Of a stretch of DNA of 64,000 nt, positions 16,530 to 47,620 are shown in pieces. Origin of the DNA: Anolis carolinensis (Eukaryota); assembly GCF_035594765.1 (NCBI RefSeq), contig NC_085843.1, positions 210,963,971 through 211,027,970 of the forward strand, in the 5' to 3' direction. Under the pieces are notes generated by a model, which saw nothing but the letters and a program-made list of their open reading frames with translations, was not told the origin of the DNA and did no database searches. The position numbers were made by a program, and so were the translations under genes. The first letter of the stretch is position 1. Each line of letters begins with the position of its first letter.

Positions 16530-18260
16530 CTCTAATCTGTTGTTAGGATAAGCTGTACTCCTCTTCAAAACACAAATAGATGACTTCAGAAACCAAAACC
16601 TCCATAAGTGAATCAAAGCTGGTGTCTCTGGTAAAAGAAATGCTGGAAACATGGATGAAGATGGCAGATTTCATGTAGAGCCAGAAATTTGACTTGGAGA
16701 ATTGATGATCTACATGAAATGTTCAGTTGATCTTGGCCATGGATTCAAGAAAGCTATATTTGGACTGGACTTGAGCAGCTATGACGGCCTGCAAGATGCT
16801 GAGTTTTGAAAAGAATAACCTCAGTGCCTAATGGAACAGTGACTAATACAGTCTATATTTAAAAGAACATGCAGGAGCTCCAAGAGTGAGGTATTTAATC
16901 TTCACAATTTAAACAGTAAGTAAATTAAGTCTTGGTCCACCTTATAGGACTTCAGTACACTGGTTGCTATTGGATACCATGTCTTAGGAATATAGCCAAG
17001 CATGGCAATTAAGGCAGCAAAATGCAAATGCTTCAATTTTATTCTTACTGCAATTAAGCGTACATCCATGGAATCAATAGAACTTACATAAAGTAGGTTA
17101 ACCATGAGCTGGAGACTAACAATGGAATTTCAACTGTAATAAGTATTAAGTGGTCCTCAAGACATGGTTGAACTTCAGTTCCTAGCATTCCTCATTCATG
17201 GCCATACCAGAGAGGGTTGCTCAGAGTAACAGTTGAACAACATGTGCAAGGCTACACAATTTAGAACAATCAAATAATCCATACTGTTAGCTTAATTAAG
17301 TTGTAGTCTCCATTTGTTAAAATCATGTCAGGTTCCAAAAACGTAACGTATTGCATTCAACTAATTCTCTATTAACCCTATGGCCTTCTGGCTGCATGCA
17401 AAGCTTCAAGTCTCCTTCTGTATGCCCAACCTTGTGTTTCCCAATATCCTCTAAAATGTATTGCAATTTGTTGTTGGCACAAAAAAATCATACAAGCGCC
17501 TACCACATTCCTGCATCACAGGGACAAGCTGATATGCTTGCTCCTGTGGAAGACAGCAATGGTCGAAGCAATTACTCTGATATTTCTTGTTTGCCACCCA
17601 AAAAAAGTTCAAAAGTGTACACCTGCTGCCCCTTAGAAGAAAAAACTGATGAGTAACCATTGGCACCAGATAGTTCATCATGATTACTGCAGTTAGGGAA
17701 AGAAAAGTACAAAACTCCTTAACAAAACAAAACTAAACAAAAACGATACTAATTGGACTCTCTTAAAATAAACAGAATGTACAATAAAAAATCAAATTGA
17801 TGAATAAAGTTGTAGACATTAATAAAGGAAATTCCATGGAGGTTTTCCAAGCTTCTAGATGCAGACAGTTTAAGCTGTTCAGACATCCAGGATTAAGACT
17901 GAGAATAGTGCAATGAATTGTATGTGTCCGGGGAGAGAAATTATTGTGGCAACTTGCTATCTCAGTCTGCCAGTTACTTAGTCATCAGTGTAGTAGGTAC
18001 AGGTATACTGTACACAGATTTATAGTGACTAAACGATCATAGGAAGTGATCACATAGGATTTGAGAGCACCTTGAGTTTAATTGATTGCTGAACTGAAGG
18101 TTTTGGAATGTGATTGATGGTTTGTGTATGTTTGTTGATATATTGTTGATTGAAAGTTTGACTGAAATAGGCAGTAGGAACGGTGTGTCAACTTGGAATT
18201 TTTGAAGGTCAAGAGTGGTTTACTATAGGAAGGCTTTTTGGAAGGTTATAGGAAATAAGT

Positions 18261-19286
18261 ATGCAGGAAACTCTGAGGAATAATGACCTCTCTTACCTAT
18301 GTGATCTTCTGGGGAAATCGTTCAGTACGGTTTTACATCAGATGGAGATACTGAGCAAGAAAATTGACCATCTTTTTAAAGGAATTTCCCTGATTGTGAA
18401 AAACTCTACTCCTATGGACATTACAACAACTGTACCAGCCAGTTTTATTAACATTGATGAGGAAACAAGTGCTTTGGAAGGCCAGGGAAGGAAGAGGCTG
18501 GAGGGGCAGAAGGTAGCCAGTAGGCTAGGATCTGAAGTTGCTAGGGGAGGGGAGGGGTTTGTGCCTGGGGGAGAGGGAAAGGGGAGGGATGGTTGGAAGG
18601 AGACCAGCAGAGTCTTGCAGAGGACAAACAACTCTTTAACATCTGAATTGTTTGGACAATCTCTGGACACTCCCAGCAATTTTCAACATCTGCTACGAAC
18701 AAACAATGTGGCAGTGGAAGTTTCAGACTCACTACTGAACAGAGGCAGATGGACATCTAAGAGAGCGGTCCAGATATCTCTATCCCAAATTCTATCTGTA
18801 AGCTGGTCGGAAGTGAAGATCAGGACTATTGACTGGCTTCATAGAGATTATCAATCCCGGAACCGCTCCTCGTGTCTTCTTATTGGACTGGAAGACAGAT
18901 TGTTAGTGGAGGAATTGTTCTCACTTGGGCCCAAATTACAACAGTGGGGCATCACTCTTAGAAGGGTATTAGTAGACCCATTGATCCGCCCTTTGGTCAT
19001 CGGGCTGAAATCTGATATACAAGATTCAATAATGTCCAACAATGGGGTTGAATGTTCGCCGGTGTTGGCCCCCTTCTCAGAGTTCCATTTTGAGACTCCC
19101 TCCCCAATTTCGAGTCCTGCCTGCTTCAACTCCCAATCCCACCCACAGACGCTACCCTTGTTCAGTCCCCTTTCCACGTCAGATGACTCCATGTCAGATG
19201 ACTCCTTTTCTCTCCGACCAGTGGAGATGGGCTCTTTCCCTAGACAAACAAGTACATTTGGAGGCTCTTCATCTTTGGACAGCTGA
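18261..19286 (+). CDS. LINE ORF1 (341 aa)
   Basis: ATG after an in-frame TAG; short heptad-like N-terminal segment, S/P-rich C-terminus; lies directly upstream of ORF2. Confidence 0.7.
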   Translation: MQETLRNNDLSYLCDLLGKSFSTVLHQMEILSKKIDHLFKGISLIVKNSTPMDITTTVPASFINIDEETSALEGQGRKRLEGQKVASRLGSEVARGGEGFVPGGEGKGRDGWKETSRVLQRTNNSLTSELFGQSLDTPSNFQHLLRTNNVAVEVSDSLLNRGRWTSKRAVQISLSQILSVSWSEVKIRTIDWLHRDYQSRNRSSCLLIGLEDRLLVEELFSLGPKLQQWGITLRRVLVDPLIRPLVIGLKSDIQDSIMSNNGVECSPVLAPFSEFHFETPSPISSPACFNSQSHPQTLPLFSPLSTSDDSMSDDSFSLRPVEMGSFPRQTSTFGGSSSLDS

Positions 19287-22200
19287 CTAACCCCTTCAGA
19301 AGGCAACCTCAATCAGCCAATCCACCAGGGGAAAGAGGGGTCACACGGATGGGGCACCATCGAGGTGGTGTGGGGGAGGAGGAAGATCGGTCACTTGCTG
19401 CCCAGGGAGAAGCGCAACAGAGTTCTTGCGACCCTGGAGAGGAATAGGTGTGGTAGTCTCCATGACAGACCCCCCGGTCTTAAGGTTCTGCTTTTGAACG
19501 CCAGATCCGTCAATGGTAAGACAGCTGTCATTCAGGATTTGATCCTGGATGAGGGGGCGGATCTGGCATGCATCACCGAGACGTGGTTGGACGAGCTGGG
19601 TGGGGTGAATCTCACCCAGTTGTGTCCACCAGGGTTCGGGGTGCATCAGCAGGCCAGGGCTGGGGGGCGGGGAGGAGGAGTCGCGGTGATCTTTCGGCAG
19701 TCCATCGCCCTGATCAGATGCGCCGTTCCGCAATCTTCGAGGTTCGAGTGTGTCTTCTTGAAGGTGGGAGCCCGAGACAGCTTGGGGATTCTGCTGGTGT
19801 ACCGTCCACCCCGCAACCCAGCAGTCTCTCTGTCTGAGCTAGCAGAAGTGGTCTCCAATTCGGCCCTGGTCTCCCAACAACTCATAGTTTTGGGAGACTT
19901 TAACATCCATGCCGAGACCACATTGACAGGTGCATCTCAGGATTTCATGGTTGCCATGACGACCATGGGGCTTACTCAAGTTATATCTGGGCCCACTCAT
20001 CAGGCGGGACACACGCTGGACCTTGTCTTTATTGTGGACGGTGGGACAGTCAGAGTGGAAGAGCAAAATATTCTTCCATTGTCATGGTCTGACCATCATC
20101 TGATCTGTTTAAGTTTCGCCGTGTCTTCTAATCTCCGCAGGGGTGGTGGACCCACTAAGATGGTCCGCCCCAGGAGGCTGATGGATCCGGATGGACTCCT
20201 GAGGTCTCTTGGGGATCTTCCTGTTCTGGAGACTGGCGATCCTGTCGATGTCCTGGCTGATCACTACAATAGTGAGCTGTCAAGGGCACTTGACACGATC
20301 GCTCCCGAACGTCCCCTTTCGCTGCGTAGAGTCACGTCGACTCCTTGGTTCACTGAGGAGCTGGCTGTGATGAAGCGTGCGAGGAGGGGACTAGAGTGCA
20401 TCTGGAGGAAATCTCAGGATGTGTCCGACCAAGCACGGGCTAAAGCCGCTATTAAGGCTTACTCCGTGGCTTTGCGAGCAGCCAGGAAAGCTTTCACGAC
20501 TGCCCGCATAGCGTCTGCAGCCAACAGGCCATCGGAGTTGTTCCGAGTTGTTGGGGAGCTCCTGCGGCCTCCTGAGACCCAGGGGCTTCCCGATGACTTG
20601 GCAACTCAGTGCAGCGATTTCGCAGACCATTTTGCAGGCAAAGTTGCTCAGATACGCCGTGAGTTGGACTCCAGCTTAACTGTAGTTCCAGCGGAGGTAA
20701 CCGAGGTACCTGTCTGTCCGATTTTGTGGGATTCTTTCCGGCTTGTTCTTCCTGATGACGTGGAGGGGATTCTTGGGTCTGTGAGGGCGACCACTTGCGC
20801 TCTGGATCCTTGTCCTTCTTGGCTGGTTAAACTGGCCAAAGATGGGTTGTTGGATTGGTTTGTGGCTATTATAAATGCCTCCTTGGGCCAGGGGATAGTT
20901 CCATCCTGCTTTAAACAGGCGGTGGTAAAACTGCTATTAAAAAAGACCTCCCTGGACCCATCTGTATGTAACAGCTACAGACTAATCTCCAACCTCCCGT
21001 TTCTGGGCAAGGTTCTGGAGCGGGTGGTTGCCACGCAGCTCCAGGAATTCCTCGATGACACTGATTTTCTGGACTGCTCGCAGTCTGGCTTCAGGCCTGG
21101 GCACAGTACTGAGACGGCTTTGGTCGCCTTGGTGGATGACCTCCGCAGGCAGCTGGACAGGGGGAGTGTGACCCTGCTGGTTCTCTTGGACATCTCAGCG
21201 GCTTTCGATACCATCGACCATGGTATCCTTCTGGGGAGGCTCTCCGGGATGGGGCTTGGTGGCACGGTTTTGCTGTGGCTCCAGTCCTTCCTGGAGGGTC
21301 GTTCCCAGATGGTGAAGCTGGGGGATACTTGCTCGGACCCCTGGCCATTGACCTGTGGGGTCCCGCAAGGGTCTATCCTATCCCCCATGCTATTCAACAT
21401 CTACATGAAACCGCTGGGAGAGGTCATCCGGAGTTTTGGAGGGCGTTGCCATCTCTACGCAGATGACACGCAAATCCACTACTCGTTCCCATCTGACTCC
21501 AAGGAAGCCCCTCGGATGCTGAACCAGTGCCTGGCCGCTGTGGCGGACTGGATGAGGAGGAACAAGCTGAGGATCAATCCCGACAAGACAGAGGCCCTCC
21601 TGGTCAGTCGCTCGTCTGATCGGGGTATTGGGTGGCAGCCTGTGCTGGACGGGGTTGCACTCCCCCTGAAATCACAGGTCCGCAGTTTGGGGGTCCTCCT
21701 GGACTCAGCGCTGACGCTTGAGGCGCAGGTGTCGGCGGTGGCCGGGAGGGCCTTTGCACAACTCAAACTTGTGCGCCAACTGCGACCATACCTCGTGAAG
21801 TCTGACTTGACCACGGTGGTGCATGCCTTAGTTACCTCTAGACTGGACTACTGTAATGCACTCTACGTGGGGCTTCCCTTGAAGACGGCCCGGAAATTAC
21901 AACTGGTCCAGCGGTCGGCGGCCAGACTAATAACGGGGGCGAGTTACAGGGAGAGATCTACTCCCCTGTTTAAGGAGCTCCACTGGCTGCCGTTCATCTT
22001 CCGGTCCCAATTCAAGGTGCAGACCATCATTTATAAAGCCCTAAACGGTTTGGGACCCACCTACCTTCGTGACCGTATCTCCTATCATAAACCTGCCCGA
22101 TCCCTTCGATCGTCAGGGGAGGCTCTCCTGTCACCACTGCCAATATCTCAGGCCCGCCTTGTGGGAACAAGGGAGAGGGCCTTCTCTGCTGTGGCCCCCC

Positions 22201-22304
22201 GATTGTGGAACTCACTGCCCGGTGAGATTAGGCAAGCCCCCACACTAGCAGCCTTTAAGAAAAACCTGAAAACATGGCTCTTCCGTTGTGCCTTTGGAGA
22301 GTAA
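19287..22304 (+). CDS. LINE ORF2, APE endonuclease plus reverse transcriptase; uninterrupted, no AUG before the endonuclease domain
   Basis: NARS, CITETW, VYRPP, GDFN, LDL, SDH (APE); QSGFR, LDISAAFD, GVPQGSILSP, YADD (RT); WNSLP..FKKNLKTWLF (L2-type C-terminus). Confidence 0.95.
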   Translation, partial: LTPSEGNLNQPIHQGKEGSHGWGTIEVVWGRRKIGHLLPREKRNRVLATLERNRCGSLHDRPPGLKVLLLNARSVNGKTAVIQDLILDEGADLACITETWLDELGGVNLTQLCPPGFGVHQQARAGGRGGGVAVIFRQSIALIRCAVPQSSRFECVFLKVGARDSLGILLVYRPPRNPAVSLSELAEVVSNSALVSQQLIVLGDFNIHAETTLTGASQDFMVAMTTMGLTQVISGPTHQAGHTLDLVFIVDGGTVRVEEQNILPLSWSDHHLICLSFAVSSNLRRGGGPTKMVRPRRLMDPDGLLRSLGDLPVLETGDPVDVLADHYNSELSRALDTIAPERPLSLRRVTSTPWFTEELAVMKRARRGLECIWRKSQDVSDQARAKAAIKAYSVALRAARKAFTTARIASAANRPSELFRVVGELLRPPETQGLPDDLATQCSDFADHFAGKVAQIRRELDSSLTVVPAEVTEVPVCPILWDSFRLVLPDDVEGILGSVRATTCALDPCPSWLVKLAKDGLLDWFVAIINASLGQGIVPSCFKQAVVKLLLKKTSLDPSVCNSYRLISNLPFLGKVLERVVATQLQEFLDDTDFLDCSQSGFRPGHSTETALVALVDDLRRQLDRGSVTLLVLLDISAAFDTIDHGILLGRLSGMGLGGTVLLWLQSFLEGRSQMVKLGDTCSDPWPLTCGVPQGSILSPMLFNIYMKPLGEVIRSFGGRCHLYADDTQIHYSFPSDSKEAPRMLNQCLAAVADWMRRNKLRINPDKTEALLVSRSSDRGIGWQPVLDGVALPLKSQVRSLGVLLDSALTLEAQVSAVAGRAFAQLKLVRQLRPYLVKSDLTTVVHALVTSRLDYCNALYVGLPLKTARKLQLVQRSAARLITGASYRERSTPLFKELHWLPFIFRSQFKVQTIIYKALNGLGPTYLRDRISYHKPARSLRSSGEALLSPLPISQARLVGTRERAFSAVAPRLWNSLPGEIRQAPTLAAFKKNLKTWLFRCAFGE

Positions 22305-23536
22305 TCACTACATACATCCCTTTTGCTGCTCTCCTTCAATATTTGTCCTCCACATCGCACCGCCACTTTATGATCCTGTCCTCTGTGGTTTTTACTCCTA
22401 CTTCCTTTCTCACCTCGAGTTTTAATCTAGTGTTCATGTGGCCCGCCCTTGGTTTTATTGTTCTTTGACCTTGTTTAATGTAGTGTATATTTTCTTTTAT
22501 TGTGTTGTTTAATGTGCTATGATTTGTTGTTCTATTATATTTTGTTATATTATATTGTTCTGGGCATGGCCCCATGTAAGCCGCCCCGAGTCCCCATTGG
22601 GGAGATGGTGGCGGGGTATAAATAAAGTTTATTATTATTATTATAAACACTTTAATGGTAGAGTCTTTGTCTTTAGATGCTGAGCTAATGACTCAAAAAT
22701 TCACACAAGGTTAGCAAAGTGTATGAAGATATTGCCTGTTTTTTTTTTTCCTTTTGATGATGCTGGCAATTATGATAGTAGTGGTCATCTCTATGGGAAT
22801 GCCAACTCATGCCAACCCTTTCCTAAAACCTGAGAAGCGACAGCTTGTCCTGTCAGTCCTGAGGACGAAGCCAGTACAAATAACATTATGTAACAAAATT
22901 TGAAGATTTTTCTGTTCCTGGTTTGAAAGTGTTATTTCCTGTTTAATTGTGTGGTACTTACTTTGAAAGTAGTTGTTCTACTCCAGAAACTTTGCTGTTG
23001 TGGTTCCCATAAACTATGTTGAATTGGTTAAGATTTGATCGGATATTCATTGAAAAAATATAGCAAAAAGATTGCAGTTTAATAAATGTATTAAATGCTT
23101 TTATGACAGAACCAATTAGGAAATGACATTTATAACCCAGGAACAAAAATCATGTTACATAGTGTAATAGCTGTTTGGCAGGAGCACTACCCCTCCTGTC
23201 TATCATGCATTTCCCAGCCTAGCAAGCTACTCTACCCTCATGTAACCAAGTTACAGCAACCAGAAAGAAGGAAAGTGCTGTGAGTTTGCCTGAGGGCATA
23301 GATGACGACCAGAAGAACCACAGTTACAGGTATGAAAACTATTCTTCCTTATGGTATCTGTGCCTCCCACAAATGGATGACAATGAGGCTTCCCAGAGTT
23401 TGTGAGTCAGGAAGCTGGAGAAGGGAAGATAGCACAGAACATGCAAAACTAGTATTTGCTCTGGATCTGCAATCTAATTTATGTTGGATGACCATAGATG
23501 ACTGTGCCATGAGGCCAGGTAGAGAAACACCATATA

Positions 23537-37166: not shown

Positions 37167-40030
37167 CTCGACCAAGTAAGATCTCACAAAGGCTACACTC
37201 ACATATAAATCCACCAAACCATGGTTTAAAGTTAGCTTGGGAAAAATGAAGTACTAGTTAGTCATAGTCACACTACAGAAAAAAAATTATTCTGGATATT
37301 AAGACCAGAAGTTATTCTACAATATTGAATTTACACTGCCTTTTTCTGGATGACTTGCAGTATGTCTGGACATCAAATTAAGACAAGTTGGAATTATCTA
37401 ACATCTTCTCATGCTTAGCAAGCTACATACAAAAAAATGAAAGGTAATAGCACCCATAGCCAAATTTATTTTAAATTGGATATTGATGACTGTATATTAT
37501 GCTACAATTACATATCACCATCTTATCAAGCTGCAACTGACCAATAAAAACATCGAATCAACCCCGATATGTCATTGCAAGTTCTGTAAAAAAAAAACCA
37601 ATAGCATTATTTTATGCCCCTTCACACTGTTTGCTGGCTCAGAGTAATTTATCCAATAATAGTATAACAGATATTGTACAAATGTGAATACAATGTTACA
37701 GAAACCTTGGGTTTGAAGTTTGCCAGGACAACATCACTATTTGTCAGAGAAGGCTAAAGACTTGTAAAAAGTCTTTGTATTTTCCTGTATGGCAAGGAGC
37801 TGTACTTGTGGTCTCTTCCATCTCTATAATTCTACGTACAGCTCCCATAAGTCTACAGATTCTACAGTGTAGATGCACCCTCGGTCAACATGCTTTTAAG
37901 AAGGCATATCTTATTAGGTCACTCACTGATTATATTAATACTCTCATTGTAGCTACTGAAATATATTTTACTTGTAGCAACATCCTCAAATACACAAGAG
38001 AGTGTTCAAGTGAATAATTTAACTATTACATGTCAACTTAAGTTGAATTTTCAGTTCGGTACAGTCAAAAATTGTTGCAGAACAGAAGACACTGAAAAGA
38101 CCAGATATTTGGGAATAAAACAGAGGATACGCCACATGGACTCAGTCAGTAACCCCGACAAAATACAAAACAGCTTCATCCAGATTCTAGTACCTGTCAT
38201 GACTTCCTATTTCCTGGTCCATAGTATCAGTACATGAACTGTGGTGCTCGACACAGTTTGCACAGTTAGTGCACTACCTGTGCCTGTTCCTGGAGATGTT
38301 TGATCTGACTATGGTGAGATTCCTTGGTTGCAACCCATTTGAATTACTGTAATGAGCTCTATATGGGGCTGCCTTTGTTAGAATGCTTAGAAACTTCAGC
38401 CACTCTAAAAGCTGTAGCCAAAATGTTAACTGGCACTTGATACAGGGAGCACACAACTCCCTTGTTGCAATAGATTCACTGGCTGCCAATCTGTTTCCGG
38501 GCACAATTCTAGGTGCTGTGACCTATAAAGTCCTACACAGCTTGGGTTCAGGCTATAGTGAAGGATTGTGTCACCCTATAAAAGACTGTGAGGAGTTCAG
38601 AATATGCCCTTCTCTGTCTTCACTACTTCCTAGGTATGTTTGGAAGGAACAAAGGAACAGACCTTCCCAGTGACTGTTAAATGGATATTAGAACTCCTCC
38701 CCTCCCCAACAAATGAAATCTTTCTAATTCTGCCAAGACATTAGGAACTGACTACAAGGGATTTTAAATATGCGCTGTTTTGTTAATTCTTTAATATAAT
38801 GTCTTTTAAGGAATTTTAAATAATTTTAATTCCATAGTTTTGAAAATAAAAACGTTTGTGTGTGCATGCACATATGGCTGTTTTATGTTTTTCATTTGTA
38901 TTGGATTTAATATTTTGTAAGTTATCTTGGGCCCCAATATTGAACCATGCCAAAGGTCAAATGCCAATGAAGAAACAATAACAAATTATAACAACAATTC
39001 TGTTTTCAAAATAGGACTCCTTTCAAAAAAGCTGTAAGGTATTTTTAGTTAATTGCCGTTATCCACCAAACTCTATATGGATTTCTCAAAATTAAGCCCA
39101 TGAATTAAACTTTTCAACCTTTAACACTCTACTTGCATTTTATTTTTTTTCATTTCTCCATTCCATTAACTGAAATTATTTTTCTTACATCTAAATGGCT
39201 CCAATTATCTCAAGAACATATGCAGAAATCTAATTTCAAACAATGGCTATTATCTTGATCTTTTTAAAAAAACATTGTCCACTTCACTGGTTTCTATATA
39301 TTCTTGGTAGATCGATGCAACTAGGTAATACATGTATAACAGATATAACAACAGCATGGTAGCCATTGTTTCAGCAATCTTCTATTGTTTGATTCATCTG
39401 ATCCCATTAAGCTTATTTTCTGTGGAAGTACACATTTCTTAATCTTCGACTTTAAAGGGGTTTTCTTTTAAGCCTCAAATTTTGTGTTAAAAGATTTCTA
39501 TTTCACAGATATACCTGCAGCAACCATTTATATTTTCCCAAAATAATTTCTACTACAATCAAGAACTTTTTAAGTATGTACTTAATATATATTTAAAGTG
39601 TTTAAAATCTGTATATGTTCTCTTAATATAAACGCATGTCTTTCAAATGTTATATATTTTAATGGTTTTATTGGTTTTAACTATGCATTTTAAATTTTCT
39701 ATGCTTAATTCTATTTTAATGGTTATATATGTTAGGTTTTAATTCACATGTTATGGTTTTTAATGTTAGCTGATTTGTGTTTCTTTTGGCAGATAATAAG
39801 CAGGGTATAAATACATATAATAATATTAATATGCATTTGATTCAATAAGAAAACATATGCTGTAAAACATATGCTTCCATGTTTAAAGCAAACATAATTG
39901 GACAAGACCTAGGAATCATAGGAAAGGTTTAGGTTTACTTAAGAGTCATCCTGTTTCACACTATACATTTAGGGTATCTTTAGGTTATCCAAAAGTGTTT
40001 TTGATTTTGAAATACTTTTATTTGCATATA

Positions 40031-42242: not shown

Positions 42243-42810
42243 AGGACCTGCCTATCTCCATGATCGCCTCCTCTCCTATGAACCAACGCGAACCCTAAGA
42301 TCATCCGGGGAGGCGCTCCTCTCGCTCCCACCTTTGTTTCAAATGCGGCTGGTGGGGACGAGGGAGAGAGCCTTCTCGGCAGTGGCCCCCCGGCTCTGGA
42401 ACTCTCTCCCCAAGGAGATCAAGTTAGCTCCTTCCCTGCCCATTTTCCGCCGGGAATTGAAAACATGGTTGTTCCAGAGCGCATTTGAATGAATAGGCCC
42501 AATAGAGCTGTCATCAGAATACTTCTTTATGTTTTAAAAGCGTATGACACTTTATCACTGTTACTCATTTCCACGATACAGCACTTTATGAAACCTGTCC
42601 CCGCTGGTTTGCTTTTAATTACTCTGATTTTATCGGATTGGATTTTAATGTATTGTCCATTATTTTATTTTGTGTATTGTTGAAATGTTTTAAGTTTTTG
42701 TCAAATATGTTGTGTCGTTGTTTCAGGCTTGTCCCTGTTGTGAGCCACCCCGAGTCCCTTCGGGGAGATGGGGCAGGATATAGAAATAAAGTTTATTTAT
42801 TATTACTATT
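42243..42810 (+). mobile_element. 5'-truncated L2 LINE of a related subfamily
   Basis: Similar to 22055-22300 and to the 3' end; AATAAAGTTTATT tail. Confidence 0.85.
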
Positions 42811-45800
42811 AAAAGAGGCAAAATCAGCATTAAACACATTATTCAGACCTACAGTATTTTTAAGATTAAGAGCTTGTCTACATTAAGTAGAACAGCAATA
42901 TTTAACACACAGCAACTTCTGGCGAGTCCTGCTGGCTTTTTTTGGTTTAATCCATTGCTGCCCATTTTTAGCGAAGTCAGGGAATACTCTGGAGTTTGCC
43001 AGAAAATCCTGAGTATCCTAGGCACTCTGGACTTAATTGGCTGTCCAAAGTGCACACCAGCGCCATCATCCTTTTCGTGCATTCATCAGCACATGGAAAG
43101 GGGATGGATCATGCCCATGCTGATGCTGTTCCTAGCCAGACATGGAGCACTGCCTAACAAAAGGAGAGAACAGAGCAGATGCTCTTCCAGGCCACCTAGA
43201 CAGCAACTCTGGATTCACCACATACTGAATTCAGGGCAAATTTCCAATTTTCCAGGGCTAAACTGCATGGTGTATATGAGCTGTAAGTATTACTGCTGTA
43301 ACATACAGCTCAAAATCCTATTCTGCCATTCAGCTATAAGGTGAACAGGTTCAGAACTACTACTTCCCATCATTACAACTGTCACCATGGATTCAATGTT
43401 TTGAATGAAGTTGACCACTGAATGCGACTGGCCACATTCCTCTTTTTTTCCTAGCTTCCAAGCCACAACCCTGTTAATTACTTGTGATTGAATGGCACTG
43501 AAAATCCTTGGCCTAATCAGACAAATATTCAGTATAAACGGAAGCCTGTGCATTTTGGCTGTGGTTGCACAAACTCTCAGTGCTCAGGAAATAGGTAGCT
43601 ACATTTGCCACTAGATAATGCTGAAGATCTTCCTACAGTATATCTGACTTGAGATGCACTGTCTACTCTGCATTATACTGGCAAAAGTTAACCTATGTTT
43701 TTTAACCACAGGACAAACTCTTCTGCAAACTGGAATAAAAAGTAATTTTAATACACAAATCTAAAGTGTAGTTCTGTCAGCTTGGCAGGGATGAAATACC
43801 AGGAGAAATACTAATGGGATACTTGGAGAAAGATGAAAGTTATACATTTGAATTAATCAATTAATTGAATTAATTAATATTTGTACATGCATGCAAATAT
43901 ATGAATGCCTTGGAATCAGATGATCTGATTGCCTCATACCACAGCTAAGGCCTTGGGCAAGTTCGACTCCCTCAGCCTTAGAGGAAGACAAAGAAAAACT
44001 CCCTCTCAATCTTGCAAAGAAAACCCTGTGACAGATTCACCTTACGGTCGCCATAAGTCAGAAATGATTTGAAGGTACACAACCACAAACAGAATAATCA
44101 TTAGATGGTCTCCAGAGCTCCTTACCCAACTGTGTTTCACTGGTGAGATACAGAGGGGACTACCAAAGAAATGACCTTTTAGTGGCTATAGAGTCATAAC
44201 CCAAAGCACTCAGCTGGTACCTATTCTAATTTGTTCAGTGCTAGGTAAAGGATATGTTTTCACAAGTCTTGAATTTTTAAACATCTAGTTATTTTTTATT
44301 CATTTTATTATACTAATTATATTGTCTGCTACTTGAATTTTTGAACTTAACTATATTTTTATAACATTACATGTTAATATTATTGCAAGCCATCTAGACA
44401 ACTCTTACTGGCCAGCATAGGAATACTGTAGAAAATGACAAATGACTGCTATTGAAAGAGTATTTATTATAATCTTTGTCATAAAATTGGCAACTAGCCA
44501 GTGCTAAGCAGCTGTCATCCAAGAGCACATTGCATCGCCTTCTCCCAACACCCCCTCCCCCATATCCAACATCTACTTTTCTTGAAACGCTACTTTAGGA
44601 TCCAAGTGCCACAGCTGTTTGCTAAACTTCAATGTCTGTATCATCAACAGGACCAATCGATCTCTAAGACCAGATCACATATGTATGAATACAGCATTCC
44701 AAATGTTTTTTTACAGTATTACCCAGGCAGGTAATATACAGTATAGAGTTCTGCAGTACCAGTAAAGTTTACCTTACACTTCTTTTATGCCACAGAACAG
44801 AAAGACAAGCATGTAATGCTACCATAGCAATAATGTTTGATACGAGTAATTAACTCCCTAACACCTGACAACTGGCTGTAAGCTCTGGTAAATGTCACAG
44901 CAACAAGAAAATGCTGCACTTATTGTGGGAGTGGACTACTGGGCAAGATGGGAAAGGATAAAGAAATAGCAGCACAAAGTTGAGGATGGCAAACAGTAAG
45001 GCTGGAGACACACAGGAATACAGGCAGAAATGAAGCTCTTTGTTGCTAAGCTTTCCCATGTATGAGGATGTTTTTCTCAAACATTCAACGAGACACCATG
45101 GTATGTTGCTGTTTTCTCTATCTCTTCATAATACAATCTTGTCATATTGTATCTTGGAAGTCTAAGCAGTGGCCTTAATATACAGTATTTTCTTCTAGTT
45201 AAAAGGAATCAGCTAATTTATTACACAATTACAAACATTATTACAAAATAGGAACAAGGCAAGAAAGCTACAATGACAATTATTTCTAACTAGTTCACTA
45301 CTTTTTCTGTTGTGTGGAAAAACAAAAATCAAGATTTGCAAAAAATAAAGTTTCCAAATCTGTGTCTCTTTAAGGTTGTATTTTTCATAGCGGACTCTGA
45401 TATTTAGTACATCAGGGATCTATACGTTTTTTAAAAGCCAAATAATACACCATGAAGTCACCAGATACCACCTGGTCTTCAAAACTAAGCAGAGTTACTG
45501 TTGTTGTGTTTTTTGTACCCTGCTTTTATCTCTTGGTCAAAACTCAAAACAGTCCACAACTTTAAAAACAATATGCTTTAAATCTACAAAATATAAATAT
45601 TAAGATCAAATTACGAATACGATTACGAAAACAAATCAGTTAAAGCACCTTAAATAAAAATTAAAACTCTTGGAAGCTATATGAACAGTCTGGCTCATTC
45701 TTGAAAATTTTCTGCTTTAAAAGCTTGTCTGAATAAAAAGGTTTTAGCTTGCCATAGGAAGGACAATAAGGGGGGGGGGGGCATTCTGGCTTCTCTGGGA

Positions 45801-47620
45801 AGGAAGTTCCAGTGCCAATGGGCATCCATGGAGAAGGCCCTTTCTCATGTCGCCATCAACTGTGCTTGCAATGGTGATGGGATTGAAAGAAGGAACATCT
45901 CAAAAATCTGAGTAGATTCACACAGGGAGATACGTTCTATGAAACAGCCAGGACCAGGACCACATAGGTCTTTATAGATCATAACAAGCACTCCGTATTG
46001 TGCTTGGAAACAAACTGGCAGAAGTAGAGTCCCAACAAGCGAGTTGTGCACTTTTTATAGTCACCCTCCCCAAAAGCATGACAAGTATTTCTATTGAGAC
46101 CACCAATGGCATGGGTAGTATTTACATGAAAGACAACAAATGAACATAAGGTGCTTTAAGAGTGTATTTCAGAGGAAGAGGCTGGCAAAATTGTCTCTTG
46201 ATATTCCTTAAGAAATGCCTATGAAATTAGTGGGAGTTACCATAAGTCAACAGGTGACTTCAATGCACACATACATTCATATATTTCACATATGGGAATT
46301 TATGTATCATTTGTGAATAAATGGCTATCAATTTAAAAGGTTCTAATGGAGAAAATAATTCGTTTATTGAACTCCTAGAAAAAATAGATTAATCTGGTGT
46401 CAATGTCTGCATGAAGTATGTCTTTGCATTCTTTCAGGCATGTTCCATCAGCACAACTATGTACTTTAAGAAGTTCAATGCACTCCTCCTCCGCCCCCCA
46501 ACCCTTAATAAGTGACAACAACAATATTTGAAGACTTGCCACTTATTCAAGCCTGGTGATAACTGGCAGCAAGTCTAGTAGTTACTTTATACCATTACCC
46601 GCAGGTTGGAAAGAAGCAATGCCATAGAATAACAATGGACAGGTCGGGATAACACAACATCAGAAAACAAACATACTTCTTTCAGAAATTAAAGCTTAGC
46701 TCAAAAAGAACTGATCTCCAGGAAAATATGGTGTACAGAAAGTTTAAGCATCTGTTTTTTAACTCAATTACTTAACAACTCTGCAATTAACTCTTTGAAA
46801 GTGGCAAGAACCATAGTTTACTTTTGGAGGTAAGTGTACTAGATGTTTCAAAACAGAAAAGTCCCTATCTCAGCCTTTAATAAAAAAAAAAAAACTATGA
46901 TCTAGCTGGGGTTGTTCTAAGAACATCGGCTGCTTTTTCTTATGTTAAAGTTACACAGTACGTACAAGACAGGGCTTGCCAAAAAGTCTGGCATTACAAT
47001 ACTGTGTACACTTTTTTGGATATAGGTAACTTTGAACTTAATGGGACTTTCCTTAAACATGTCACAGGATTTATTCATTAGCAGCATGTGATGAGCCGAT
47101 TTTGAAAAGAAACAGGAGTATTTGTCTGGAAGCAGATCCCTTTCAATATATCTTGTGTCATTTAAAATAAATCAAATAGCTAAAGAAGACATGGCCAAAT
47201 ACATAACTGAAGATTTATCGTTATAAGTGTACAGAACACTTAAGTTACTCATTTACTGCTTCCTCTAGTATAATGTAATGAGCAGTGGAGAAATTTATCT
47301 ACAATTCTGTTTTTGATAGCAATGCTATACACACACACACACACACACACACACGTGTGTGTGTTTGTGTGCATGTGTGTGTGTATATAAGGTTATGCCC
47401 GGGGGAACTAGTATGAATTTAAACAAAAGACATGAATGAAATGTAGTCATTTAATTACTTGCATGTAATTATTGGGGGGGAAAGACTCCACATAACATTT
47501 AACAACAGGCATTAGAACCAAGATGCTAAGGATCAAGAAATCGTAGATATCACAAATGTATCCATGTCAGAAGAGCTTGATGACATTCACCCACACAAGT
47601 TAATTGCTCTCTTAAAACTA

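What the first reader, a model, noticed from the sequence alone, without database searches (positions are those of the whole stretch)
19260..19400. L2 LINE ORF1 and ORF2 share one frame, separated by a single TGA in a readthrough context (TGA-CTA)
Seen: ORF1 (ATG 18261) and ORF2 are in the same frame. The only stop between 18261 and 22301 is TGA 19284-19286, followed by CTA ACC CCT TCA... with no stop into the endonuclease domain. The first in-frame AUG of ORF2 is at 19947, after most APE motifs, so AUG initiation cannot give an intact endonuclease. Established: UGA-CUA is a classic leaky-stop context (alphavirus nsP3/nsP4; UGA-CUAG in vertebrate genes); characterised LINEs mostly use re-initiation or translational coupling. 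Inference: this family may express a 1347-aa ORF1-ORF2 fusion by programmed readthrough, setting ORF1:ORF2 stoichiometry like gag-pol. CCCCT (19291-19295) could pair with AGGGG (19336-19340) as a weak 3' stimulator.
Basis: partly seen in the sequence, partly recalled or inferred. Interest (0 to 1): 0.8.

Follow-up and report, generated by a model that had tools for sequence, protein, structure and literature searches.

The report
Lizard L2 LINE with in-frame leaky stop
An apparently intact L2 jumping gene of an Anolis lizard has its RNA-binding gene and its enzyme gene in one reading frame, split only by a conserved UGA stop in a known leaky context, so the enzyme is probably made as a rare fusion by reading through the stop, which sequence alone cannot prove.

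Summary
ORF1 (18261-19286) and the endonuclease/reverse-transcriptase ORF (open 19287-22304) share one frame. TGA 19284-19286 is the only stop, and the first in-frame ATG (19947) lies three quarters into the endonuclease domain.

The stop is not a defect of this copy:
- The dominant family contig in a public run keeps TGA-CTAA and has no ATG.
- Five of six complete, diverged ORF1 proteins from Anolis carolinensis (29-74% identity) end at the same place on Ser.
- A diverged L2 family (locus L003; ORF1 38%, ORF2 76% identical) keeps the same frame and the 9-mer AGC-TGA-CTA amid flanks about 50% identical.
- The six bases after the stop (CUAACC) equal those of the Sindbis virus opal readthrough site.
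- Four mutually distant LINE contigs from metagenomes also have ORF1 and ORF2 in one frame with a single stop; three are UGA-C.

- No downstream RNA structure is more stable than shuffled sequence.
- A sister subfamily has an ATG five codons after the stop site.
- ORF2-only L2 relatives have their own AUG, so termination-reinitiation is not excluded.

My odds are readthrough fusion about 0.55 and reinitiation or non-AUG initiation about 0.3.

This scan had already noted the same arrangement on two other pieces of this genome (s1-535981, s1-552482). I found no published description.

The parts
18000..18260 (+). 5' UTR of the L2 copy. The true 5' end is not determined; it lies at or upstream of 18000.
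   Evidence: Multi-copy depth already at 18000-18155 in all four runs. No homology in other loci and no target-site duplication found to set the boundary.
18261..19286 (+). ORF1, 341 codons plus TGA. It encodes a predicted long N-terminal helix (aa 3-47), a disordered stretch, an RRM-fold domain (aa 146-239) and a disordered tail.
   Evidence: No Pfam family. Only 7 cluster representatives in 1.84 billion proteins, those with a named source from Anolis carolinensis, none fused to ORF2. AlphaFold model and RRM matches, best with the human L1 ORF1p central domain 2w7a_B at Z 7.3.
18696..18977 (+). RRM-fold domain of ORF1p (aa 146-239)
   Evidence: pLDDT 64-90 with beta-alpha-beta-beta-alpha-beta order. 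Nearly all of the top 50 PDB matches are RRMs.
19281..19292 (+). Conserved junction signal AGC TGA CTA ACC: the last Ser codon, the in-frame UGA and the leaky 3' context
   Evidence: The same 9-mer AGCTGACTA is at L003 7003-7011, in frame with that copy's ORF1 and ORF2, amid flanks about 50% identical. CUAACC equals the Sindbis virus site. The dominant family contig is identical here (record 21).
19287..19358 (+). Poorly conserved 24-codon linker between the stop and the conserved start of the ORF2 core. It contains no AUG.
   Evidence: It is 25 codons in L003, an in-frame length change. 8 of the 19 codons comparable with sister subfamily proteins differ. The other two frames are also largely free of stops here, so openness alone is not evidence of coding.
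19359..19370 (+). I-E-V-V motif, where cross-family and cross-species conservation of ORF2 begins. It includes GTG 19365.
   Evidence: GTIEVV here, GSIEVV in L003, GLIEVV in P0064, GAPIEVV in L004/L005 and GTAIGVV in Varanus. DNA identity rises from about 55% to 75-87% from 19355 on.
19287..22304 (+). ORF2 open frame, 1005 codons plus TAA, with endonuclease 19503-20096 and reverse transcriptase 20943-21692
19947..19949 (+). First in-frame ATG of ORF2, inside the endonuclease domain. Database gene models of 785 aa start here.
   Evidence: Cluster P0048 (785 aa, 193 members).
22305..22646 (+). 3' UTR ending in an (ATT)n-type short tandem tail
   Evidence: High multi-copy depth at 22524-22660.

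Best explanation
This is a young, apparently intact L2-clade LINE of an Anolis lizard, most likely A. carolinensis. Its mRNA carries one long reading frame. Most ribosomes stop at UGA 19284 and make ORF1p, a coiled-coil plus RRM RNA-binding protein. A small fraction decode the UGA with a near-cognate tRNA because of the weak UGA-CUA context. These continue through a flexible 24-residue linker into the endonuclease and reverse transcriptase, giving a 1347-aa ORF1p-ORF2p fusion. This would set a low enzyme-to-coat ratio and tie the enzyme to the ORF1p/RNA particle, as gag-pol readthrough does in gammaretroviruses. Shown here: the anatomy, the lack of a usable AUG, and the conservation of stop position, frame and context. 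Inferred: that readthrough happens, how efficient it is, and that the fusion is the active enzyme.
For: 1. One frame, one stop, and no in-frame AUG before residue 221 of ORF2. 2. The stop is family-wide. In run X16 the dominant contig across 19217-19378 (depth 194 of 205) differs from the window only at 19252, 19269, 19291 and 19349, so it keeps TGA, CTAA and GAA. Four contigs bridging the junction at 85-97% identity have no gaps. 3. The stop position is old. ORF1 proteins at 74, 47, 37 and 37% identity (P0001, P0021, P0023, P0024) end at the aligned position on Ser, as this copy does. None of the 7 representatives is an ORF1-ORF2 fusion. 4. L003, a diverged and degraded L2 family copy, has ORF1 and ORF2 in the same frame. 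It has AGC TGA CTA G, the only 9-base identity in about 300 nt of roughly 50% identical sequence, and a linker that differs by exactly one codon. 5. The context UGA CUA ACC matches Sindbis virus nsP3/nsP4 over six bases (review PMC13517186). 6. Four mutually distant LINE contigs (25-30% identity) that were retrieved without regard to frame all have ORF1 and ORF2 in one frame split by one stop. Three are UGA-C and lack an AUG before the endonuclease motifs, and a fifth is one continuous ORF. With the window and L003 that makes 5 of 5 UGA stops followed by C. 7. Conserved residues (G-x-I-E) lie upstream of the only well-placed near-cognate codon, GTG 19365. 8. ORF1p ends in a predicted disordered tail of about 100 residues, which suits a tether.
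Against: There is no direct measurement. No downstream RNA structure beats shuffled sequence in the window, L003, L009 or L010. The +7 base is A here, not the G of the strongest vertebrate motif CUAG. The linker is weakly conserved and the other frames are also open there, so coding constraint right after the stop is not shown. A sister subfamily has Met five codons after the stop site. ORF2-only L2 relatives start with their own AUG in this region. From published work on human L1 (Alisch et al. 2006, as summarised in PMC5972666), ORF2 can be made by an unconventional termination-reinitiation. DNA was seen for only two ORF1-type families. The environmental sample is small and of unknown taxa. 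None of the runs laid is on record as RNA, so expression is not shown.
Confidence: 0.55

Rival explanations
1. Termination-reinitiation or AUG-independent initiation. Ribosomes finish ORF1 at UGA 19284, the 40S subunit stays on the RNA, and translation restarts within the next few dozen bases. It would restart at AUG in the sister subfamily and at a non-AUG codon here, giving a separate ORF2p as proposed for human L1 and shown for SART1.
For: Sister subfamily proteins P0064, P0069 and P0070 start with Met five codons after the stop position. ORF2-only L2 relatives have an AUG 12-86 codons upstream of the IEVV motif, so an independent ORF2 N-terminus in this region is functional. Reinitiation has published precedents in LINEs (PMC5972666). 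GTG 19365 and ATC 19359 have purine at -3 and G at +4.
Against: Reinitiation does not need a shared frame. Yet the frame is shared in the window, in L003, in two earlier-noted copies and in four distant LINE lineages. It also does not predict conservation of the bases after the stop (CUA) or the recurrence of UGA-C. There is no AUG in the dominant contig of this subfamily or in L003. The only near-cognate codon upstream of the conserved G-x-I-E residues is ATC 19320, in poor context.
Confidence: 0.3
2. The arrangement has no function in this subfamily. Copies without an ORF2 start codon are non-autonomous and are copied in trans, through the shared 3' tail, by L2 relatives that have an AUG. 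Alternatively, the copy is simply a recent dead insertion.
For: L2-type LINEs are of the stringent type, in which the enzyme recognises the 3' tail (PMC3880073, PMC4176376), so trans-mobilisation is possible. AUG-bearing relatives coexist in the genome.
Against: ORF1 (341 codons) and ORF2 (1005 codons) are both intact. Hundreds of database proteins of this family keep the 785-aa stretch open (cluster of 193 members). Thousands of contigs are at least 99% alike. The stop context is conserved across families that differ by 62% in ORF1.
Confidence: 0.1
3. The TGA is a private CGA-to-TGA (CpG) or TGG-to-TGA mutation of this one copy, and the family really has a single fused ORF.
For: The preceding base is C (AGC TGA), so a CpG transition from CGA would be easy. 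L011, a distant LINE, is one continuous ORF.
Against: The dominant family contig keeps TGA. P0001 and three more distant ORF1 proteins end at the same residue. L003 has TGA in the same 9-mer. No ORF1-ORF2 fusion protein is among the relatives found in 1.84 billion representatives.
Confidence: 0.03

Closest known systems
Alphavirus nsP3/nsP4 opal readthrough (Sindbis virus; type II motif UGA-CUA / UGA-CGG)
   Same: An in-frame UGA sits ahead of the polymerase-encoding region. The six bases after the stop are identical (CUA ACC; review PMC13517186). The product would be a minor fusion that carries the polymerase.
   Different: This is a cellular retrotransposon, not an RNA virus. Alphaviruses have an extended 3' stem-loop starting 9-16 nt downstream, and no such structure is supported here. 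Readthrough has not been measured here.
Gammaretrovirus gag-pol readthrough (MoMLV type III, UAG plus pseudoknot)
   Same: The logic is the same: a structural RNA-binding protein and the reverse transcriptase in one frame, with their ratio set by a leaky stop and the enzyme tethered to the coat protein.
   Different: The stop codon is different (UAG), and a downstream pseudoknot is required. It is an LTR element with protease processing. No protease or pseudoknot is present here.
Vertebrate cellular UGA-CUAG readthrough genes (OPRL1, OPRK1, AQP4, MAPK10; Loughran et al. 2014, from my own knowledge; OPRL1 mutagenesis mentioned in PMC13517186)
   Same: The host translation machinery and the core UGA-CUA motif are the same. 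L003 and the two earlier-noted copies have the full CUAG.
   Different: This subfamily has CUAA. The cellular cases add short C-terminal extensions, not a 1005-residue enzyme.
LINE bicistronic translation: SART1 UAAUG coupling and human L1 unconventional termination-reinitiation
   Same: The problem solved is the same: making a little ORF2p from an ORF1-ORF2 RNA. The element class is the same (PMC5972666).
   Different: SART1 has an overlapping stop-start with an AUG. L1 has a 63-nt spacer and an AUG, and the frame is not an issue. Here there is no AUG, and the frame and 3' context are conserved.
Lizard L2 families as described in the literature (Ruggiero and Boissinot 2020, PMC7140322; Metcalfe and Casane 2014, PMC4120745 group L2_1)
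   Same: Two ORFs, with an AT-richer ORF1 and a GC-rich ORF2 (composition). ORF1 has no recognisable domain by sequence.
   Different: Those papers do not mention the shared frame, the single stop or how ORF2 is translated. The RRM fold of ORF1p seen here is also not reported there.

Membership tests
L2-clade LINE (non-LTR retrotransposon) | ORF2 with an N-terminal apurinic-type endonuclease followed by a reverse transcriptase | tested here: met
   Pfam Exo_endo_phos 1.1e-14 (aa 73-270) and RVT_1 8.9e-37 (aa 553-802)
L2-clade LINE (non-LTR retrotransposon) | 3' end with a short tandem-repeat tail rather than poly(A), and many 5'-truncated copies | tested here: met
   (ATT)n-type tail at about 22628-22646. 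Depth over ORF2 and the 3' end is 10-100 times that over ORF1. L001, L006 and L007 are 5'-truncated copies.
L2-clade LINE (non-LTR retrotransposon) | Reverse transcriptase groups with L2 in a phylogeny of reference LINE clades | not tested
No reference set of LINE clades was available.
Programmed stop-codon readthrough (type II, UGA-CUA) | A single in-frame stop between two coding regions, with the downstream one lacking its own usable start | tested here: met
Programmed stop-codon readthrough (type II, UGA-CUA) | Leaky context: UGA followed by C, ideally CUA | tested here: met
   UGA CUA ACC, equal to Sindbis virus. L003 has UGA CUA G.
Programmed stop-codon readthrough (type II, UGA-CUA) | Stop, frame and context conserved in diverged relatives | tested here: met
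   Distant LINEs. DNA was seen for only two ORF1-type lizard families.
Programmed stop-codon readthrough (type II, UGA-CUA) | Coding constraint on the codons right after the stop | tested here: inconclusive
   The frame is kept across a one-codon length change and in four gap-free contigs. But the linker is poorly conserved and the other frames are open too.
Programmed stop-codon readthrough (type II, UGA-CUA) | Stimulatory 3' RNA structure (frequent but not obligatory) | tested here: not met
   z-scores -0.07 to +1.74, with no fold better than shuffles in the window, L003, L009 or L010
Programmed stop-codon readthrough (type II, UGA-CUA) | A measured readthrough product | not testable with these tools
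   Needs a reporter assay, ribosome profiling or mass spectrometry
Termination-reinitiation coupling (SART1 / calicivirus type) | A start codon overlapping or close to the stop | tested here: not met
   No AUG in any frame between 19287 and 19348 in this copy. The out-of-frame ATG at 19349 is absent from the family majority (A>G).. A sister subfamily does have Met five codons downstream.
L1-type (type II) ORF1p | Coiled coil followed by an RRM and a C-terminal domain; Pfam Transposase_22 | tested here: inconclusive
   A helix at 3-47 and an RRM fold at 146-239 are predicted, with the best match to the L1 ORF1p RRM at Z 7.3. There is no Pfam match and no folded C-terminal domain. The model has a mean pLDDT of 52 from a 7-sequence alignment.

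The most novel reading that the evidence does not exclude
Readthrough of an in-frame UGA-C stop is the regular way of making ORF2p in a broad, old group of L2/CR1-like LINEs, not only in anole L2. These elements would in effect be single-polyprotein retroelements with a gag-pol-like leaky stop. That would be the first programmed readthrough described for non-LTR retrotransposons, and a second, mechanistically distinct answer to the long-standing question of how LINEs translate ORF2.
Probability: 0.4. Interest if true: 0.85.

Novelty: new variant of a known kind. Interest (0 to 1): 0.7.

Why it matters
How LINEs make a small amount of ORF2p from a bicistronic RNA is settled only in outline for human L1 and for one insect element. 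A LINE family whose ORF2 has no start codon, and whose in-frame UGA and leaky context are conserved, gives a simple and directly testable alternative. It would also show convergence between non-LTR elements, retroviruses and alphaviruses. It predicts an ORF1p-ORF2p fusion, which would explain cis-preference physically. It would add a natural, compact vertebrate readthrough cassette that lacks the usual downstream structure. The anole genome holds many near-identical copies, so the element is probably still active and can be studied experimentally.

Tried and rejected
- Other copies in the window: only 3' fragments are present (38321-38614, 42244-42812, 45719-46021), with no second junction.
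- The look-up of encoding contigs used all 12 look-ups. P0001, P0002, P0023, P0024 and P0064 are not on record. L001 (Varanus), L006 (Anolis) and L007 (Rhineura) are 5'-truncated copies without a junction.
- Read laying returned Logan contigs only, and 745 variant rows were not shown. Absence of a variant at the TGA is therefore inferred from one fully accountable contig, not from a complete table. No run is on record as RNA, so expression is not shown.
- Downstream RNA structure was rejected as unsupported.
- The 5' end and target-site duplication were not found.
- The viral-contig scan found nothing. The scan with the ORF1 alignment failed for lack of conserved columns.
- Literature: nine full-text searches found no paper describing an in-frame stop or readthrough in L2 or CR1 LINEs. 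Novick et al. 2009 on anole LINEs is not held.
- From memory, Wright et al. 1996 described the Arabidopsis LINE Ta11-1 as having ORFs separated by an in-frame stop. I could not verify this here.
- Selenocysteine, splicing across the stop and frameshifting were considered. They were set aside because nothing points to them and the frames already agree.
Full report
**Observation**

The window holds one full-length LINE on the + strand.
- In the frame of ATG 18261 the only stops between TAG 18249 and TAA 22302 are those two and TGA 19284-19286.
- ORF1 is 341 codons. The frame then stays open for 1005 codons.
- Pfam finds the endonuclease at residues 73-270 and the reverse transcriptase at 553-802 of the second piece, and nothing in ORF1.
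- The first in-frame ATG after the stop is 19947, residue 221, well inside the endonuclease.
- The junction reads GAC AGC TGA CTA ACC CCT.
- The element ends in an (ATT)n-type tail near 22646.

**Whose element it is**

The closest proteins are Anolis carolinensis reverse-transcriptase proteins at 92-97% identity, and squamate LINE proteins beyond that. A published survey states that lizard L2 has two ORFs, with ORF1 AT-rich and ORF2 GC-rich (PMC7140322). This matches the composition shift seen here, from about 0.36-0.46 GC over most of ORF1 to about 0.55-0.62 in ORF2. I did not build a clade phylogeny.

**Is the stop a private defect? No.**

1. Contigs of four public runs were laid on 18000-22660. 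In run X16 two contigs cover the junction. The main one (record 21) spans 19217-19378 at depth 194 of 205, has no gaps and has four differences from the window. The table lists exactly four differences carried by it: 19252 G>A, 19269 T>C, 19291 C>T and 19349 A>G. It is therefore identical to the window at TGA, at CTAA and at GAA 19299-19301. Three more contigs at 85-88% identity cross the junction without gaps, so the frame relation holds in more diverged copies. The variant table was cut, with 745 rows not shown, so this rests on that one accountable contig.
2. An exhaustive profile search of 1.84 billion representatives with ORF1 found seven proteins of 236-356 aa. The four with a named source are from A. 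carolinensis; the other three are MetaClust/UniParc-only records without an organism. None runs on into ORF2. In the alignment P0001 (74% identity), P0021 (47%), P0023 and P0024 (37%) end at the same aligned position as the window. All end on Ser preceded by Asp, Glu or Lys, although their tails are otherwise unalignable.
3. P0022 led to locus L003 on an A. carolinensis chromosome. This is a degraded copy of a diverged family, with ORF1 38% and ORF2 71-84% identical. It has a private TAA and a TGG>TAG change. Even so, ORF1 and ORF2 are in the same frame, and 36 bases after the private TAA stands GGG AGC TGA CTA GGC.
4. In a pairwise alignment the ORF1 tail and the linker are about 50% identical with many gaps. 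AGCTGACTA is the only 9-base identity in that stretch. Identity rises to 75-87% only from CC ATC GAG GT (the I-E-V-V motif) onward.
5. The linker is 24 codons here and 25 in L003, an in-frame length change.
6. I estimate the chance of such a 9-mer at the stop of both at about 0.01-0.02.

**Context**

A 2026 review lists the Sindbis virus site as UAC UGA CUA ACC GGG and classes UGA-CUA as the type II readthrough motif (PMC13517186). The six bases after the stop are the same here. L003 and the two copies noted earlier by this scan have CUAG, the strongest vertebrate context.

**Where ORF2 begins**

Conserved residues G-x-I-E-V-V are shared by:
- the window (GTIEVV);
- L003 (GSIEVV);
- sister subfamily proteins (GLIEVV);
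- an ORF2-only anole L2 family (GAPIEVV);
- a Varanus L2 (GTAIGVV).

GTG 19365 encodes the first V, so translation must start upstream of it. Between the stop and that motif the only near-cognate codon is ATC 19320, in poor context.

**Evidence that cuts the other way**

- Three UniProt proteins of a sister subfamily (P0064, P0069, P0070; 1001 aa; 88% identical over the N-terminus) start MGNLNQ, where the window reads SEGNLNQ. That subfamily therefore has an ATG five codons after the stop position. I could not obtain its DNA.
- ORF2-only L2 relatives carry their own AUG: Varanus L002 (MSTSVYPGEHTGTAIGVV) and anole L004/L005.
- An independently initiated ORF2 N-terminus in this region therefore works. 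Termination followed by reinitiation, for which LINE precedents exist (PMC5972666), stays a live rival.
- No RNA structure downstream of the stop is more stable than shuffled sequence in the window, L003, L009 or L010.
- The other two frames are also nearly free of stops between 19290 and 19445. The open linker is therefore not evidence of coding by itself.

**A wider pattern**

One scan of metagenome contigs with the ORF2 N-terminus returned seven distant LINE loci. Four are informative and mutually only 25-30% identical.

| Locus | ORF1 (codons) | Stop and next codon | ORF2 |
|---|---|---|---|
| L008 | 275 | TAG GAA | 1025 codons |
| L009 | at least 468 | TGA CTG | endonuclease |
| L010 | 328, with a weak PHD-finger match | TGA CAT | 937 codons |
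| L012 | ORF1 tail | TGA CTT | endonuclease |

- In all four the two ORFs are in one frame with a single stop.
- In L009, L010 and L012 the first in-frame AUG lies inside or after the endonuclease.
- L011 is one continuous ORF.
- None has ORF1 in another frame.
- Four of four in frame has a chance of about 1%. With the window and L003, five of five UGA stops are followed by C.
- A restart mechanism predicts neither the shared frame nor UGA-C. Leaky termination predicts both.
- The sample is small and the hosts are unknown.

**ORF1p**

- A model from the seven-sequence alignment has a mean pLDDT of 52, but 64-90 over residues 150-238.
- It shows a long helix (3-47), a disordered stretch, a beta-alpha-beta-beta-alpha-beta domain (146-239) and a disordered tail of about 100 residues.
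- A search of 48,161 PDB chains returns almost only RRMs. The human L1 ORF1p central domain is first (2w7a_B; Z 7.3, rmsd 3.8, 84 residues aligned), which is in the middling range for this tool.
- Metcalfe and Casane list group L2_1 ORF1 as type V with no hits (PMC4120745).
- A coiled-coil RRM protein with a long flexible tail suits a gag-like partner tethered to the enzyme. That last step is inference.

**Verdict**

The stop, the frame and the leaky context are conserved features of ORF1-bearing lizard L2, and probably of a wider LINE group. My odds:

| Explanation | Odds |
|---|---|
| Programmed readthrough giving an ORF1p-ORF2p fusion | 0.55 |
| Reinitiation or non-AUG initiation just after the stop | 0.3 |
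| A non-autonomous subfamily copied in trans | 0.1 |
| A private mutation | practically excluded |

Nine full-text searches found no description of this in LINEs, and the key 2009 anole paper was not available. This scan had already flagged the same arrangement on two other pieces of this genome (s1-535981, s1-552482). The present copy adds:
- a CUAA variant of the context;
- the ORF1 C-terminus conservation;
- the AUG-bearing sister subfamily;
- the distant LINE lineages.

Noticed in passing
L004 4051-5584 and L004 6001-9209; L005 6001-9216: A second structural type of anole L2. It has no ORF1, its ORF2 has its own AUG, and the 5' UTR is made of 8.5 tandem 181-bp monomers that are 99% alike, reminiscent of mouse L1 promoter monomers. 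L005 carries an intact 1071-codon ORF that is annotated as an isoform of a glutamate receptor gene.
   Followed up: partly
L008 248-4150; L009 1-2484; L010 359-4156; L012 662-1531; L011 1620-2954: Distant LINE contigs from metagenomes (hosts unknown) also have ORF1 and ORF2 in one frame with a single stop (TAG-G, TGA-CTG, TGA-CAT, TGA-CTT). L011 is one continuous ORF. This may be a general design in this LINE group.
   Followed up: partly
window 18261-19283 (ORF1p), domain at 18696-18977: ORF1p has no Pfam match, and the literature lists it as unclassified. It is predicted to have a long N-terminal helix and an RRM fold, whose best PDB match is the RRM of human L1 ORF1p (Z 7.3).
   Followed up: partly
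protein P0026 (UniRef A0A803TWV0, Anolis carolinensis): This database protein joins the N-terminal half of an L2 ORF1 in frame to the middle of the reverse transcriptase. It probably comes from an internally deleted L2 copy.
   Followed up: no
window 19173-19205: A 15-bp tandem duplication (TCCACGTCAGATGAC, 2.2 copies) in the ORF1 tail gives the repeated peptide SDDSMSDDS. It lies in the poorly conserved, predicted disordered tail.
   Followed up: no
window 38321-38614, 42244-42812, 45719-46021 (minus strand): Three further 3'-terminal fragments of L2-type LINEs, 39-69% identical in protein to the C-terminus of ORF2. They are typical 5'-truncated copies.
   Followed up: no
window 19349: The out-of-frame ATG at 19349 in this copy comes from a private G-to-A change. 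All contigs in the four runs have G there, so the family majority has no AUG in any frame between the stop and 19462.
   Followed up: partly
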